This document shows positions 6,541-56,075 of a DNA stretch of 64,000 nucleotides, piece by piece. Numbering within the stretch: position 1 is the stretch's first letter; every line of letters starts with the position of its first letter. The position numbers and the translations under genes are program-made. The stretch is from the IMG/VR virus record IMGVR_UViG_3300026484_000007, positions 208,603 through 272,602 of that record. One strand, 5' to 3'. The notes beneath the pieces are model-generated. The model saw only the letters and a program-made list of their open reading frames with translations, ran no database searches and was not told the DNA's origin.

Positions 6541-6672
6541 TTTCTTTAACTTTCTTTATCAGGCGATAAAAATCGAATAATCCCGCCTGACTGGAGCGAA
6601 ATACCAGTCACAAAATTATTTTACATGGGTTAAAATAAGGAGATCGCACTGAAGATGCGCTTTTATAATTAC

Positions 6673-6744
6673 ACCAAAAACGAAGGTTCGATTCCTTCCT
6701 TTCCCAACATAATAGGGAAAGTAGCCAAGAGGTAAGGCATTGGT
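6673..6744 (+). tRNA. circularly permuted tRNA-like domain (3' half precedes 5' half, no closed anticodon loop)
   Basis: ACCAA-aaac-GAAGG-TTCGATT-CCTTC-CTTTCCC-A, 8-nt linker, then GGGAAAG-TA-GCC-AAGAGGTAA-GGC-A-TTGGT. All four stems pair perfectly. Confidence 0.8.
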
Positions 6745-6775
6745 TCCAAAATATAAATATATAACAATCGAACGA

Positions 6776-6938: not shown

Positions 6939-6976
6939 AAAACCCTCGCATAGTGCGAGGGTTTTTTTGTCGTTAG
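6939..6976 (+). terminator. intrinsic terminator with GTCGTTAG tail
   Basis: AAAACCCTCGCA-TAG-TGCGAGGGTTTTTTT. Confidence 0.9.
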
Positions 6977-7015
6977 AAAAAATTAGATAAAATTAGAAAA
7001 ATAAAAAAATTTTGT

Positions 7016-7110
7016 AAATAAAATCTATGGGGAGCAATGCTCCCCATAGGGGGACTTTGTCCCCCTTGGAGGAGTGGAGACTTTTCGTCTCCACTCCTCT
7101 CTTTCTGCTA
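7016..7110 (-). ncRNA. GC-rich triple-hairpin cassette 1 (putative small RNA; strand uncertain)
   Basis: Hairpins CTATGGGGAGC/GCTCCCCATAG, GGGGGAC/GTCCCCC and GAGGAGTGGAGAC/GTCTCCACTCCTC. Leftward promoter-like motif at 7116-7145. On the - strand the last hairpin is followed by ATTTTATTT. Confidence 0.5.
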
Positions 7111-7115
7111 TTTAT

Positions 7116-7145
7116 ATATCAATTAAAACTAAAGCAGTTCTAAAA
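7116..7145 (-). promoter_or_regulatory. bipartite motif TTTTAGAACT-N14-(A/T)GATAT (putative phage promoter)
   Basis: Same motif and spacing at 7334-7363, 7966-7995 and 8695-8724, the last directly upstream of the only - strand gene. Confidence 0.55.
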
Positions 7146-7166
7146 AATCTCCGTAAATAAAATTAC

Positions 7167-7328
7167 AAATAAAATCTATGGGGAGCATTGCTCCCCATAG
7201 GGGGACTTTGTCCCCCACTCACTGGGGTGGTTGCCCACATTGGCAACGGGAGCAATCCCGCTCATTTGAGCGGGGCCCGACCACCCCGGAGGACTCACCT
7301 CCTTTCTTGGAGTCCTCCTTTTTTGCTA
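7167..7328 (-). ncRNA. GC-rich multi-hairpin cassette 2 with SD/anti-SD loop (putative small RNA; strand uncertain)
   Basis: Shares the two terminal hairpins with cassettes 1 and 3. Extra multibranch domain at 7224-7287. Hairpin 7288-7318 has loop ACCTCCTTTCTTG. Confidence 0.55.
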
Positions 7329-7333
7329 ATTAA

Positions 7334-7363
7334 ATATCTGATAAAACTAAAGCAGTTCTAAAA
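7334..7363 (-). promoter_or_regulatory. TTTTAGAACT-N14-AGATAT motif
   Basis: Copy of the bipartite motif, followed on the - strand by TAGCAAAA. Confidence 0.55.
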
Positions 7364-7442
7364 AATCTTTATAAATAAATTTAAAAAATCTTTTCTAAAA
7401 CAATATATAAATTATCAATTAAAATATATAAGGAGATTAATT

Positions 7443-7727
7443 ATGGCAACTGCTTTTCATAAAGATTACAATGCAGAATACGTAATCGGTGATGACGTTG
7501 TAAATTCTGAAGAAGTAAAAAATACTCAGCCAACTGTATTATCTAAAATTATAGATGGAAAACCAGCTGATGTTAATACCGAAACTAAAGATATGCTAAC
7601 CGAAGAAACTGTATGGTTTAGAAATGACAGAATCAGACAAACTCTTCAAGATCAATACACTGAAGTTTCTAGACAAACTTTTGAAATTGATCAATTTGAA
7701 ACTACTGATTTACCAGGAAATCCATAA
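7443..7727 (+). CDS. hypothetical protein
   Basis: 94 aa, AAGGAG RBS. Confidence 0.75.
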   Translation: MATAFHKDYNAEYVIGDDVVNSEEVKNTQPTVLSKIIDGKPADVNTETKDMLTEETVWFRNDRIRQTLQDQYTEVSRQTFEIDQFETTDLPGNP

Positions 7728-7778
7728 GCAAATATTGCGATGCATGGCGCTAATGGATAACTCGTATATATATCTCAT

Positions 7779-7826
7779 AAAACTCCGGAGTTCTAAAATA
7801 GAGCTCTGGAGTTTTTTTGTCGTTAG
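7779..7826 (+). terminator. intrinsic terminator with GTCGTTAG tail
   Basis: AAAACTCCGGAGTTCT...AGAGCTCTGGAGTTTTTTT. Confidence 0.7.
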
Positions 7827-7865
7827 AAAAAATTAGAAAAAATTAGAAAAAATAAAAAAATTTGC

Positions 7866-7960
7866 AAATAAAATCTATGGGGAGCAATGCTCCCCATAGG
7901 GGGACTTTGTCCCCCTTGGAGGAGTGGGGAATTTTCATCTCCACTCCTCTCTTTCTGCTA
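7866..7960 (-). ncRNA. GC-rich triple-hairpin cassette 3 (near copy of cassette 1)
   Basis: Part of a ~185-bp direct repeat (6961-7145 vs 7811-7995). Confidence 0.5.
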
Positions 7961-7965
7961 TTTAT

Positions 7966-7995
7966 ATATCTAATAAAACTAAAGTAGTTCTAAAA
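7966..7995 (-). promoter_or_regulatory. TTTTAGAACT-N14-AGATAT motif
   Basis: Copy of the bipartite motif. Confidence 0.55.
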
Positions 7996-8042: not shown

Positions 8043-8663
8043 TTAAGCCTCCGATTGATGCTTTTTAAGCAATTTATCGAAGGCTTTCAGATACCTACTA
8101 ATCTTGACAATATACACAATTGTCGCCCCTGAAATTATCCCGAATAGGAGTATAACTCCATTGTCGGGCAACTTCAGGTATGAATAGCCCATTAATAATA
8201 GGGCCACAACCAATTGCACTCTCGAGCGCGCTTTATTCACGTCACTCGAAAACGTCTCCGCCTCTTCTGAATTCAGCAAGACGTTCGTCAAAACTGAATT
8301 CATGTTCGCCTGAACGGCGAACAACAATACATACAGCGGAAAGATCAATACGACGATCTTTGCCGCTAATACTCTATCTATCTCCGGATGGAGATAGAAT
8401 AGGTACACTAGAATGCAGAAATACGCTACATCTAGTGTGCTTAATAACACGAAGCTCGCAAAGTAGCTAATTTTGTGTGTTAGCCACTTATTGAACTCCA
8501 TCATTGTAGCGCTCATTAGACTAATGAACGCGATAAACCCAACCGAGAACTCACCATAAAGGTGAGACTCAAATGGTTGAATTATTTGGAAAGCTAAGCT
8601 TCCCAGAATAACTATCTTTATTCTTAATGTTAAGAATAAAGACTTCAATACTTCCATCTTCAT
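8043..8663 (-). CDS. polytopic membrane protein (about 5-6 TM)
   Basis: AAGGAG RBS on the - strand, several hydrophobic helices, visibly more GC-rich than neighbours. Confidence 0.75.
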   Translation of the reverse strand: MKMEVLKSLFLTLRIKIVILGSLAFQIIQPFESHLYGEFSVGFIAFISLMSATMMEFNKWLTHKISYFASFVLLSTLDVAYFCILVYLFYLHPEIDRVLAAKIVVLIFPLYVLLFAVQANMNSVLTNVLLNSEEAETFSSDVNKARSRVQLVVALLLMGYSYLKLPDNGVILLFGIISGATIVYIVKISRYLKAFDKLLKKHQSEA

Positions 8664-8694
8664 CTTTTCTCCTTTGATTTTTTTGCTATTTTAG

Positions 8695-8724
8695 ATATCT
8701 CATAAGCCTTTACCAGTTCTAAAA
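8695..8724 (-). promoter_or_regulatory. TTTTAGAACT-N14-AGATAT motif upstream of the - strand gene
   Basis: - strand reads TTTTAGAACT ggtaaaggcttatg AGATAT ctaaaaTAGCAAAAAAATCAAAGGAG...ATG. Confidence 0.6.
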
Positions 8725-13176: not shown

Positions 13177-13317
13177 GAAAACTCGTGATCTTAAAACGTT
13201 GAGCTTCATTAGATATCTAAAGATATATACGAGTTCTAAAATTTATAAAACCGTTTTAGAACTCGTATATATCCTTAGCATCGAAAAAAGATGCTACTTG
13301 AAAAATCAAAGTTTTTC
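13177..13317. repeat. ~140-bp dispersed palindromic element, copy A
   Basis: GAAAACTCGTGATC..AAAACGTTG..GATATATACGAGTTCTAAAA..TTTTAGAACTCGTATATATC..GATGCTAC..AGTTTTTC. Confidence 0.85.
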
Positions 13318-17549: not shown

Positions 17550-17680
17550 GAAAACTTGAGTTTCCAGAACGTTGAGCTTCTATAGATATCTAAAGATATA
17601 TAGCAGTTCTAAAAATTTTAGAACTGCTTTTATATCGCTTGTATCTAAAAAAGATGCTACGTGGAAAATCAAAGTTTTTC
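17550..17680. repeat. ~140-bp dispersed palindromic element, copy B
   Basis: Same core, GCAGTTCTAAAA/TTTTAGAACTGC. Confidence 0.85.
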
Positions 17681-26750: not shown

Positions 26751-26890
26751 AAAACTTGAGATTCGCGGACGTTGCGCTTCTGTAGATATCTAAAGATATA
26801 TAGCAGTTCTAAAATTATCAGAGTGGTTTTAGAACTCGTATATATCTTTGTGTATCCAAAATAGATGCTACATAGAAAATCAAGTTTTTC
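26751..26890. repeat. ~140-bp dispersed palindromic element, copy C
   Basis: Same core. Confidence 0.85.
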
Positions 26891-41494: not shown

Positions 41495-41625
41495 GAAAAC
41501 TCGTGATCCTAAAACGTTAAGCAACGATAGATATCTAAAGATATATAGCAGTTCTAAAATTTTTAGAACTGCTTTTATATCGCTTGTATCTAAAAAAGAT
41601 GCTACGTGGAAAATCAAAGTTTTTC
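41495..41625. repeat. ~140-bp dispersed palindromic element, copy D
   Basis: Same core. Confidence 0.85.
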
Positions 41626-41650: not shown

Positions 41651-41791
41651 GAAAACTCGTGATCTTAAAACGTTGAGCAACGATAGATATCTAAAGATAT
41701 ATACGAGTTCTAAAACCACTTTAGAAATTTTAGAACTGCTTTTATATCGCTTGTATCTAAAATAGATGCTACTTTAAAAAACAAGTTTTTC
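41651..41791. repeat. ~140-bp dispersed palindromic element, copy E (tandem with D)
   Basis: Same core. Confidence 0.85.
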
Positions 41792-55945: not shown

Positions 55946-56075
55946 TTTTTAAAGTAGCATCTATTTTCGATACAAGCGATATAAAAGCAGTTCTAAAAAA
56001 TTTAGAACTGCTTTAGAACTCGTATATATCTTTGGGTATCTAATGAAGCGCAACGTTTTAGGATCACGAGTTTTC
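55934..56075. repeat. ~140-bp dispersed palindromic element, copy G (inverted)
   Basis: Reverse complement reads GAAAACTCGTGATCCTAAAACGTTGCGCTTC...GATGCTAC. Confidence 0.85.

What the first reader, a model, noticed from the sequence alone, without database searches (positions are those of the whole stretch)
7016..7995. Three GC-rich stacked-hairpin cassettes, each with its own promoter-like motif: a small-RNA family
Seen: in a very AT-rich genome, three units of back-to-back perfect hairpins with 3-5 nt loops share two constant hairpins and differ in the third domain. Each is preceded on the - strand by TTTTAGAACT-N14-(A/T)GATAT-N5-TAGCA, the same arrangement found upstream of the RBS of the - strand gene at 8663, and each ends in hairpin + ATTTTATTT. 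Inference: 95-160 nt leftward sRNAs with a constant scaffold and variable effector domain. Caveat: a few G-U pairs and a GCAA tetraloop fit the + strand better, and the 3-nt loops (AAT vs ATT, TTT) would also fit DNA cruciforms such as an origin or hairpin promoter.
Basis: partly seen in the sequence, partly recalled or inferred. Interest (0 to 1): 0.75.

Follow-up and report, generated by a model that had tools for sequence, protein, structure and literature searches.

The report
Hairpin-only small RNA genes in phage
Three short units in an uncultivated deep-sea-vent jumbo phage each pair a phage promoter with two to five very stable hairpins and a terminator, with no protein-coding frame, so they most likely make small structured RNAs of unknown function, expressed from the same promoter type as the phage's anti-CRISPR gene.

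Summary
Three units (c1 7016-7145, c2 7167-7363, c3 7866-7995) each carry the motif TTTTAGAACT-N14-WGATAT-N5-TAGCA on the minus strand. Perfect GC-rich hairpins follow, then a shared 41-nt double hairpin and ATTTTATTT. They fold more densely than anything else in this 272.6-kb, 27% GC jumbo phage from a hydrothermal vent.

The motif is one of three classes sharing TTTTAGAACT ("class C", about 14 copies). It also precedes ordinary minus-strand genes, including a Csx3 ring nuclease. It precedes three other ORF-less structured RNAs that fold better, or carry cUUCGg loops, on the promoter's strand. Relatives (52-62% RNAP identity) have the same promoter-leader-hairpin-TTTTATTTAC units, but with small ORFs.

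Best reading: independent leftward units making about 93-nt (c1, c3) and about 160-nt (c2) non-coding, nuclease-resistant RNAs. A fourth, divergent member lies at genome 53.45 kb.

Function is not shown. With almost no unpaired sequence, protein binding or decoy action is likelier than antisense pairing.

No expression data exist, and there are no homologues outside this contig and no Rfam match. Rivals are empty relic cassettes, terminators or insulators, and a DNA-level role. The "constant scaffold" is mainly the terminator module, and c1 and c3 are duplicates.

The parts
7106..7145 (-). c1 class C promoter-like element: TTTTAGAACT (7136-7145), 14-nt spacer, TGATAT (7116-7121), 5 nt, TAGCA (7106-7110)
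   Evidence: Exact pattern match with 0 expected by chance. The same class stands before minus-strand genes and other structured RNAs.
7069..7099 (-). c1 5' hairpin (HP3): 13 perfect pairs and a 5-nt loop. The 5' arm is purine-rich and Shine-Dalgarno-like (GAGGAGUGGAG).
   Evidence: Inverted repeat I10; folds.
7048..7066 (-). c1 HP2: GGGGGAC/GTCCCCC stem with a 3-nt loop, directly abutting HP1
7016..7049 (-). c1 HP1 (25-nt palindrome, 7025-7049) followed on the minus strand by AUUUUAUUU (7016-7024): an intrinsic-terminator-like 3' end
   Evidence: Terminator scan.
7324..7363 (-). c2 class C promoter-like element
7288..7318 (-). c2 5' hairpin: 9-bp stem GGAGGACUC/GAGUCCUCC. Its 13-nt loop reads, on the minus strand, as a 12-nt perfect Shine-Dalgarno sequence (AGAAAGGAGGUG). 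On the plus strand the loop copies the 16S rRNA 3' end.
   Evidence: Sequence; folds. The 7-nt arms GAGGACU/AGUCCUC are shared with the middle hairpin of the 53-kb unit.
7224..7287 (-). c2-specific branched domain: outer 8-bp stem GGGGUGGU/ACCACCCC enclosing two hairpins
7167..7216 (-). c2 HP2 (7200-7216), HP1 (7176-7200) and U-tract (7167-7175)
7956..7995 (-). c3 class C promoter-like element
7866..7949 (-). c3 RNA body: HP3 (7919-7949; apex differs from c1 at 7928, 7931 and 7937), HP2 (7898-7916), HP1 (7875-7899) and U-tract (7866-7874)
6973..7002 (.). Three phased 10-bp repeats TTAGAWAAAA between the plus-strand terminator and c1. The same triplet lies at 7823-7852 next to c3 and next to the 53-kb unit.
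   Evidence: The pattern occurs only at these three loci in the genome.
6939..6975 (+). Plus-strand terminator of the phage's standard type (hairpin + T7 + GTCGTTAGAAAAAA) just upstream of c1. Its twin at 7779-7820 precedes c3.
   Evidence: About 33 copies genome-wide.
8684..8724 (-). Class C promoter-like element of the 206-aa membrane-protein gene (8043-8663, minus strand). That gene has no strong terminator of its own and runs into c3.

Best explanation
c1, c2 and c3 are three autonomous leftward transcription units, similar in layout to phage 'morons'. Each consists of a phage promoter of the TTTTAGAACT family (class C), a purine-rich leader, two to five perfect GC-rich hairpins and an intrinsic terminator (HP1 plus a U-tract). 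There is no reading frame.

They would yield very stable non-coding RNAs of about 93 nt (c1, c3) and about 160 nt (c2). Together with a divergent fourth unit at genome 53.45 kb they form a small family.

The 5' hairpin starts within a few nucleotides of the presumed start site, and the 3' end is a double hairpin. The RNA should therefore resist exonucleases at both ends and accumulate.

c1 and c3 have only about 10 unpaired nucleotides plus 3-5-nt loops. I infer that they act by being bound, titrating or decoying a hairpin- or SD-recognising host or phage protein, rather than by long antisense pairing. c2 additionally displays a 12-nt perfect Shine-Dalgarno sequence in a loop.

Shown: the anatomy, the promoter class and the paralogous and orthologous architecture. 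Inferred: transcription, strand, start site and timing (probably early, by analogy with other RNAP-encoding jumbo phages). Speculative: the decoy function.
For: **The motif is a recurrent, directional element.**
- The exact 40-nt pattern matches at all three units, with 0 expected by chance.
- About 14 class C copies lie genome-wide. Each points at a minus-strand ORF with SD and ATG at a fixed distance, or at a structured ORF-less stretch ending in a hairpin plus T-run.
- One driven gene is a Csx3 ring nuclease (Pfam E=1.5e-26, PADLOC E=3e-27).

**Strand of the other class C non-coding units.**
- They fold better on the promoter's strand: -66 vs -54 and -110.5 vs -89 kcal/mol.
- They carry cUUCGg tetraloops only on that strand.
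- Their first helices begin 3-5 nt after the TAG(C/T) box. This places the start site there.

**Class C transcripts are specially structured.** The median for the first 120 nt is -0.40 kcal/mol per nt, against -0.16/-0.17 for classes A/B and -0.12 for background.

**Relatives with 52-62% RNAP identity carry the same unit type.** The unit is TTTAGAA(C/G)T-N13/14-TG(A/G)(A/T)A(A/T)T...TAGCA-A-run-SD, then a long hairpin plus TTTTATTTAC. It runs opposite to the flanking genes at the same hot spot next to the gene-94 homologue and the RNAP gene.

**Other points.**
- Plus-strand terminators stand immediately upstream of c1 and c3, so plus-strand read-through is unlikely.
- c1 and c3 differ at 11 of 186 positions. 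None falls in HP1, HP2, the lower HP3 stem or the promoter boxes.
- No frame has a start codon with a usable SD, and no frame is shared between copies.
Against: - There are no expression data at all. No RNA run holds the sequence.
- No homologue of the cassettes exists outside this one contig, so no real covariation test is possible.
- The stems are almost entirely Watson-Crick and fold equally well on both strands. This also fits a DNA-level or two-strand role.
- The single G-U in c3 favours the plus strand.
- In every relative examined, units of this promoter class carry ORFs. The ORF-less units here could therefore be relics.
- The polymerase, start site and timing are inferred by analogy only (PMC7598289, PMC5312081).
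- The proposed protein partner is unknown.
Confidence: 0.55

Rival explanations
1. Empty or decaying expression cassettes. These would be class C 'moron' units that lost their small ORF by deletion, leaving promoter, SD leader, 5' stem-loop and terminator. They may still be transcribed but have no function of their own.
For: - All class C-type units in relatives encode something: Csx3, a 67-aa protein, a 49-aa membrane peptide, or a conserved 13-aa mini-ORF whose 3' half forms the terminator arm.
- The c1 leader and HP3 resemble the end of that mini-ORF unit in L039, with four paired changes.
- The cassettes keep an SD-like tract but no start codon. c3 has an ATG where c1 has ACG.
Against: - The stems are flawless, although c1 and c3 have diverged by 6%, with changes confined to flanks, spacer and the HP3 apex.
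- Four ORF-less hairpin-only units exist in one genome, plus two clearly RNA-selected class C non-coding RNAs.
- The HP3-type hairpin (GGAGTGGAG/CTCCACTCC) also turns up in 42 unrelated viral contigs, so the L039 resemblance may be convergence.
Confidence: 0.18
2. Transcription terminators or insulators. The hairpin stacks would stop transcription from both directions between convergent and divergent units and give protective 3' ends to leftward mRNAs. The promoters would be incidental.
For: - The terminator scan calls sites on both strands in each unit.
- c3 lies just downstream of the 206-aa gene, which lacks a strong terminator of its own.
- Perfect palindromes work in both directions.
Against: - Standard plus-strand terminators already stand immediately upstream of c1 and c3.
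- c1 and c2 have no upstream leftward gene to terminate.
- This reading does not explain three complete, conserved promoters, or the c2 branched domain.
Confidence: 0.1
3. DNA-level element. The palindromes would extrude as cruciforms or bind a protein, acting with the adjacent 10-bp repeats and AT-rich DNA as a replication origin (promoter-primed, as in T7 or T4) or another DNA signal.
For: - The stems are almost purely Watson-Crick and symmetric.
- Three phased TTAGAWAAAA repeats occur only beside c1, c3 and the 53-kb unit.
- Tandem promoters face an AT-rich stretch.
Against: - The cumulative GC-skew extremes and gene-orientation switches lie at about 70 kb and about 188 kb, not at 215.6-216.6 kb.
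- The 10-bp unit is simply the tail of the phage's standard terminator, tripled.
- Everything in this genome is AT-rich.
- U-tracts and promoter boxes are explained better by RNA.
- Loops of the homologous 53-kb unit are cUUCGg, an RNA-specific signature.
Confidence: 0.08
4. Plus-strand RNAs. The hairpins would be transcribed rightward, presenting a 16S 3'-end mimic (ACCUCCUUUCU) in the c2 loop that could mask Shine-Dalgarno sequences.
For: - c3 folds 4 kcal/mol better on the plus strand because of one G-U pair.
- c2 ends on the plus strand in a hairpin plus T6.
- At the 53-kb unit a class A promoter does point rightward into the hairpins.
Against: - No TTTTAGAACT-type promoter lies on the plus strand near the cassettes.
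- Strong plus-strand terminators sit directly upstream.
- A natural variant gives the opposite G-U bias.
Confidence: 0.05

Closest known systems
Phage 'morons' (autonomous promoter-gene-terminator inserts of lambdoid phages; from my own knowledge)
   Same: Each unit is self-contained, with its own promoter and terminator. It sits between, and opposite to, the flanking genes at a hot spot where relatives carry different cargo: Csx3, small membrane peptides or a mini-ORF.
   Different: The cargo here is RNA structure only, with no ORF. The promoter is a phage-specific motif of a jumbo phage that encodes multisubunit RNAPs, not an evident host sigma-70 promoter.
Stable small RNAs of virulent phages with no assigned function, such as T4 RNA C and RNA D in the tRNA region (from my own knowledge)
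   Same: They are short, highly structured and ORF-less. They lie in an RNA-gene neighbourhood; a permuted tRNA-like gene lies 270 nt away.
   Different: There is no sequence or Rfam relationship. These units have their own promoters rather than being processed from a tRNA precursor.
RNA anti-CRISPRs / solitary repeat units (Racr; Camara-Wilpert et al. 2023, from my own knowledge)
   Same: They are small phage RNAs with their own promoter, encoded among anti-defence genes. This promoter class drives Csx3, and a relative carries CRISPR-like repeats behind its Csx3 at the same hot spot.
   Different: The defining feature, likeness to a host CRISPR repeat, was not found. HP1 occurs only as single chance sites in 8 unrelated genomes.
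5' stem-loop mRNA stabilisers plus intrinsic terminators (E. coli ompA leader, B. subtilis ermC/aprE leaders; from my own knowledge)
   Same: A hairpin starts within a few nucleotides of the presumed 5' end, and a terminator hairpin sits at the 3' end. Class C mRNAs in this phage and its relatives show the same 5' hairpins.
   Different: There is no message between the two ends.
Early (virion-RNAP) promoters of RNAP-encoding jumbo phages (AR9, phiKZ, phiR1-37; PMC5312081, PMC7598289)
   Same: A long, highly conserved, over-represented motif heads many operons. This phage encodes split beta/beta' RNAP subunits, and its nearest isolates are phiR1-37 and AR9-type phages.
   Different: The motif sequence is unrelated to AAATATATATTAT-N6-G. 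It comes in three classes, two of them arranged as about 28 divergent pairs. Timing and polymerase are untested, and the AR9 late motif is not enriched here.

Membership tests
Any described RNA family (Rfam 15) | Covariance-model score at or above the family's gathering threshold | tested here: not met
   There were no gathering-level hits in the window. The rest of the genome gave only six tRNAs. Permissive hits over the cassettes are all far below threshold and are generic hairpin matches.
Intrinsic (Rho-independent) terminator | GC-rich hairpin followed directly by a T/U-rich tract | tested here: met
   HP1 plus ATTTTATTT on the minus strand in all three units. There are also plus-strand calls at HP3 and at the c2 5' hairpin.
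Independent sRNA gene | Own promoter upstream and own terminator downstream on one strand, with no ORF between | tested here: met
   Promoter-class motif, terminator, and no usable start codon or shared frame. 'Promoter' is defined by recurrence and context, not by assay.
Independent sRNA gene | A discrete transcript is detected | not testable with these tools
   No RNA run was listed. Only DNA runs from vent metagenomes hold the sequence.
Base-pairing (antisense, seed-type) sRNA | Accessible single-stranded seed, with complementary targets | tested here: inconclusive
   c1 and c3 leave about 10 nt at the 5' end plus 3-5-nt loops unpaired. Only c2 has a 13-nt loop. Matches in the phage genome are limited to RBS complements. 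The host is unknown.
RNA anti-CRISPR / solitary repeat unit | Sequence and structure copy a CRISPR repeat of the host | tested here: not met
   An exact scan for HP1 in one genome each of 185,579 species gave 8 single, non-repeated sites in unrelated taxa. The host may be unsampled, and near matches were not searched.
Small protein or leader-peptide gene | Start codon at proper distance from an SD, with the frame conserved between copies | tested here: not met
   Three-frame translations. The c3 ATG is ACG in c1 and in the natural variants.
Replication origin | Coincides with a strand-compositional or gene-orientation switch | tested here: not met
   The switches lie at about 70 kb and about 188 kb, and the cassettes at 215.6-216.6 kb.
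Replication origin | Iterons plus an unwinding element plus initiator binding | tested here: inconclusive
   Three 10-bp repeats adjoin c1 and c3, but they are the tripled tail of the standard terminator. No initiator is known.
Dispersed palindromic repeats (REP/BIME, MITE) | Many dispersed copies, terminal inverted repeats or target duplications | tested here: not met
   There are three copies, all within 1 kb. None occurs elsewhere.
N4-type DNA hairpin promoter | Short 5-7-bp hairpin with a 3-nt loop, read by a giant single-subunit virion RNAP | not tested
   The loops are 3 nt, but HP1 and HP3 have 11-13-bp stems. The RNAP genes found are multisubunit phiKZ/AR9-type. I made no genome-wide search for an N4-like RNAP.

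The most novel reading that the evidence does not exclude
The hairpin-only RNAs are an RNA arm of the phage's anti-defence set. They would be made from the same promoter class as the Csx3 ring nuclease and would act as nuclease-proof decoys. The targets would be a host RNA-guided or RNA-sensing immune component, such as a Cas6-type hairpin binder, a type III complex or a structured-RNA sensor, or an SD-cleaving or SD-binding factor.
Probability: 0.12. Interest if true: 0.8.

Novelty: new member of a known kind. Interest (0 to 1): 0.45.

Why it matters
Small RNAs of virulent and jumbo phages are barely charted. The phiKZ dRNA-seq study predicted one sRNA and could not confirm it (PMC8244752).

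This uncultivated vent jumbo phage appears to devote at least six units of one promoter class to structured non-coding RNAs. They sit beside a Csx3 anti-CRISPR candidate and a CRISPR-linked DNA-binding homologue.

If the RNAs are made and bind a host factor, they would be a compact and easily synthesised handle on RNA-based host takeover or counter-defence in thermophile phages. The promoter class itself would give a ready map of accessory units in this phage group.

If they are relics, they show how such units decay.

Tried and rejected
- **Rfam.** Gathering and permissive thresholds gave nothing for the cassettes.
- **Homologues of the HP1+HP2 block.** I searched IMG/VR and JGI metagenomes and found only the window's own contig.
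- **The promoter core in IMG/VR.** It gave ten single, probably chance, hits.
- **HP1 as a mimic of a repeated host element.** I found 8 isolated sites in unrelated genomes and no arrays.
- **RNA sequencing runs.** None was listed. Laying DNA contigs gave only a few variants, and assemblies break at the repeats.
- **Antisense targets within the phage.** Only RBS complements turned up.
- **HP1/HP2 as fragments of a Csx3 gene.** Csx3 genes encode G-x-I-x-P with similar palindromes. The alignment scores are no better than shuffles, so I rejected this.
- **AR9-type late promoter AACA-N6-TA.** I looked for it as a way to label the TTTTAGAACT class 'early' by exclusion. It is not enriched upstream of genes (12 vs 8.7 expected).
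- **HP3-type hairpins in IMG/VR.** 42 hits in unrelated phages of 28-59% GC are ordinary intergenic hairpins. This weakens the L039 homology argument.
- **Neighbouring proteins.** The 94-aa and 206-aa products matched no family, and only the 94-aa product was searched in the protein atlas, which gave no informative match.
- **Kin search.** It is not available for a virus record.
Full report
**What the window is.**
- The window is the right-hand 64 kb of a 272,602-bp virus record (97% complete by CheckV, 27% GC). It was assembled from a hydrothermal-vent metagenome.
- It encodes ribonucleotide reductase and split beta/beta'-like RNA polymerase subunits of the phiKZ/AR9 type.
- The nearest isolates are Yersinia phage phiR1-37 and AR9-like Bacillus, Listeria and Staphylococcus jumbo phages, at only about 24-27% identity for one RNAP subunit.
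- Genes run rightward at 0-70 kb, leftward at 70-190 kb and rightward again to the end. GC skew turns at the same points.
- The finding lies in a rightward block, between the reductase genes and an RNAP gene cluster.

**The observation.**
- Three units are present exactly as described. They share a 41-nt block of two abutting perfect hairpins.
  - HP1 is a 25-nt palindrome.
  - HP2 has a 7-8-bp stem and a 3-nt loop.
- This block occurs three times in the genome and never in shuffles.
- c1 and c3 add a 13-bp hairpin (HP3). c2 adds a 9-bp hairpin with a 13-nt loop and a branched domain.
- Fold energies are 6-10 standard deviations below shuffles on either strand. These are the most densely folded stretches of the whole genome.
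- On the minus strand each unit is preceded by TTTTAGAACT-N14-WGATAT-N5-TAGCA and followed by ATTTTATTT.
- c1 and c3, with their flanks, are 94% identical over 186 nt.

**The motif is a promoter-type element of this phage.**
- TTTTAGAACT occurs about 75 times in three extended classes.
- Classes A and B form about 28 back-to-back divergent pairs between operons. In at least one place class A leads straight into an SD and ATG.
- Some class C copies stand 20-25 nt before an SD and ATG. These include:
  - the 206-aa membrane-protein gene at 8043-8663;
  - several small proteins at 171-175 kb;
  - a 98-aa Csx3 homologue (Pfam PF09620 E=1.5e-26, PADLOC Csx3 E=3e-27).
- Other class C copies stand before ORF-less, GC-rich, structured stretches that end in a hairpin plus T-run. 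These are the three cassettes and units at genome 53.5 kb, 128.6 kb and 174.8 kb.
- In reviews of RNAP-encoding jumbo phages, the over-represented conserved motif has in every tested case proved to be the early, virion-RNAP promoter (PMC7598289; AR9 in PMC5312081). By analogy the TTTTAGAACT family is probably that. Neither the polymerase nor the timing can be tested here.
- A simple sigma-70 scan does not call the motif. The AR9 late motif is not enriched.

**Which strand.**
- The cassettes cannot decide the strand on their own. The stems are almost purely Watson-Crick, so both strands fold alike.
- One G-U pair in c3 favours the plus strand. A natural variant in another run creates one that favours the minus strand.
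- The paralogous units do decide.
  - The 174.8-kb RNA folds at -66 vs -54 kcal/mol on the promoter's strand, and the 128.6-kb RNA at -110.5 vs -89 kcal/mol.
  - The 53.5-kb and 174.8-kb units carry cUUCGg tetraloops only on the promoter's strand.
  - In all of them the first helix starts 3-5 nt after the TAG(C/T) box. This places the start site there and makes TTTTAGAACT and WGATAT the upstream boxes (inference).
- Standard plus-strand terminators (hairpin, T7, GTCGTTAGAAAAAA; about 33 copies) sit immediately upstream of c1 and c3. No plus-strand TTTTAGAACT is nearby.
- I therefore take the units to be transcribed leftward, giving RNAs of about 93, 160 and 93 nt.

**A fourth family member.** The 53.5-kb unit has the following features.
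- It has the same promoter variant and purine-rich leader as c1.
- It has three perfect hairpins in a long-short-long order, enclosed by a 6-bp closing stem.
- Its middle hairpin has arms (GAGGACU/AGUCCUC) that recur in the c2 5' hairpin.
- Its 3' flank matches that of c1 and c3. This flank includes the triplet of TTAGAWAAAA repeats, which occurs nowhere else.

**Relatives.**
- The cassettes have no match outside this contig. Proteins 52-62% identical to the RNAP subunit led to contigs of related vent phages.
- These carry the same kind of unit in the same orientation relative to their neighbours. It has a TTTAGAA(C/G)T box, a 13-14-nt spacer, a TG(A/G)(A/T)A(A/T)T-type box, TAGCA, an A-run and an SD. 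It ends in a long perfect hairpin with a TTTTATTTAC tail.
- Their cargo differs:
  - a Csx3 gene followed by two 37-nt CRISPR-like repeats (L041);
  - a 49-aa membrane peptide (L044);
  - a 67-aa protein (L037);
  - a conserved 13-codon mini-ORF running into its terminator (L039, L043).
- In three of five genomes the unit sits divergently upstream of the homologue of the 94-aa gene (7443-7727), next to the RNAP gene. That position is therefore a hot spot for such inserts.
- Class C transcripts are specially structured, whether coding or not. The median is -0.40 kcal/mol per nt, against -0.16/-0.17 for classes A/B and -0.12 for background. Perfect 12-15-bp hairpins even lie inside the coding sequences at 160-175 kb.

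**What the cassettes most likely are.**
- They are promoter-to-terminator units without a message. Each has a 5' hairpin that sequesters an SD-like purine tract, the HP2 hairpin, and the HP1 terminator.
- No frame has a start codon at a workable distance from an SD, and none is shared among copies.
- c1 and c3 differ at 11 positions. Five are in the AT-rich flank, three in the promoter spacer and three at the HP3 apex. None is in HP1, HP2, the lower HP3 stem or the promoter boxes. If substitutions fell evenly, about five would be expected in those parts.
- This, together with four such units and two clearly RNA-selected class C RNAs in one genome, makes functional small RNAs the best reading (about 0.55).
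- With so little unpaired sequence, c1 and c3 are poor antisense regulators. A stable, exonuclease-proof RNA that is bound by something is more plausible, but I cannot name the partner.
- c2 is the only one with an exposed element: a 12-nt perfect complement to the 16S rRNA 3' end in a 13-nt loop.

**Rivals.**
- *Relics of class C genes that lost their ORFs* (0.18). All relatives' units encode something, and the c1 leader and HP3 resemble the tail of the L039 mini-ORF unit with four paired changes. That hairpin type also occurs in 42 unrelated viral contigs, so the resemblance may be convergent.
- *Terminators or insulators* (0.10). Both strands score as terminators, and c3 probably does end the 206-aa mRNA. 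But standard terminators already flank the units, and the promoters remain unexplained.
- *A DNA-level role such as an origin* (0.08). The stems are symmetric and 10-bp repeats adjoin them. But the skew and orientation switches are elsewhere, and the repeats are the tripled tail of the standard terminator.
- *Plus-strand RNAs* (0.05).

**Comparison with known kinds.**
- In layout the units work like phage morons whose cargo is RNA. In content they resemble the stable, function-unknown small RNAs of T4.
- Membership in any Rfam family, in the RNA anti-CRISPR class (likeness to a host repeat), in dispersed palindromic repeats, or among small protein genes was tested and not met.
- They are a new family within the known kind 'phage-encoded small non-coding RNA gene'.

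**Limits.**
- There is no transcript evidence and no cultured host.
- No close relative carries the cassettes.
- Start site, polymerase and timing are inferred.
- The mechanism beyond 'stable structured RNA' is a reasoned guess.

Noticed in passing
window 6672-6750 (+): A circularly permuted tRNA-like gene. The anticodon-stem 3' strand, T-arm and acceptor 3' strand come first. An 8-nt linker follows, then the acceptor 5' strand, D-arm and an anticodon stem-loop reading UUCCAAA. ARAGORN finds nothing in the native order. It calls a 69-nt tRNA-Trp(CCA) when the halves are rejoined in silico. Rfam gives weak permuted-tmRNA hits, but the 3:70 pair is G-C, so alanine identity is lacking. An AT-rich 200 nt and the terminator at 6939-6975 follow. 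A permuted tRNA in a phage would be unusual.
   Followed up: partly
genome 173339-173635 (-) = L014:14939-15235; genome ~166446-166829 (-) = L014:8046-8429: The phage encodes a 98-aa Csx3 homologue (a cA4 ring-nuclease family) under a class C promoter. It also encodes a 127-aa homologue of the CRISPR-linked 'Mvol_0529' DNA-binding family (E=4e-33). Both lie in a GC-rich, hairpin-rich leftward region at 160-176 kb and are likely counter-defence genes against type III CRISPR.
   Followed up: partly
L041:6-120 (relative, 62% RNAP identity): Two 37-nt direct repeats separated by a 41-nt spacer lie directly behind, and cut into, a class C-driven Csx3 gene. This looks like a CRISPR-like mini-array or solitary repeats at the same hot spot as the cassettes. 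The contig ends there.
   Followed up: no
genome-wide; in the window e.g. 13232-13263, 17605-17625, 26805-26836, 41550-41570, 41706-41737, 55989-56020: About 28 back-to-back divergent pairs of TTTTAGAACT elements (classes A and B) lie between operons. Each has about 55-65 nt of conserved downstream sequence. One of each pair usually fires against the upstream gene's terminator.
   Followed up: partly
genome-wide, about 33 copies; in the window 6939-6982, 7779-7832, 26708, 41477, 49338: The phage's terminators share a fixed tail after the hairpin: T7-GTCGTTAGAAAAAA. Many stems contain GTGATC...GATCAC. Relatives have similar tails (TTTTTTTGTC...), which suggests a polymerase-specific termination or processing signal.
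   Followed up: no
genome ~128440-128688 (-) and ~174770-174905 (-): Two larger class C-driven structured RNAs (about 250 and 135 nt) have identical promoters and the same first 14 nt. They show a strong strand bias in folding and have no Rfam match. The first is followed by an SD and a gene, so it may be a leader or riboswitch-like element.
   Followed up: partly
genome 160.8-175.3 kb (-), e.g. inside the Csx3 gene; L036:5655-5780 (+): Perfect 8-15-bp GC-rich hairpins lie inside the coding sequences of small class C genes; about half of all such hairpins in the genome fall in this 15 kb. A relative has a 39-codon ORF made of four stacked hairpins with GAAA, UUCG and GCAA loops.
   Followed up: no
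L036:9400-9940: Six tandem copies of a roughly 100-nt AT-rich repeat lie immediately upstream of the RNAP subunit gene in the closest relative.
   Followed up: no
window 7789-7798 (-), within the terminator at 7779-7820: A further TTTTAGAACT-N14-GATAT element without the TAGCA box overlaps the plus-strand terminator of the 94-aa gene. It points antisense into that gene.
   Followed up: no
genome ~164.8-165.7 kb (-) = L014:6409-7320: A 303-aa ORF has an actin/ParM-like N-terminal phosphate-binding motif (DIGYSSTK). This rests on reading the sequence only; no family search was run.
   Followed up: no
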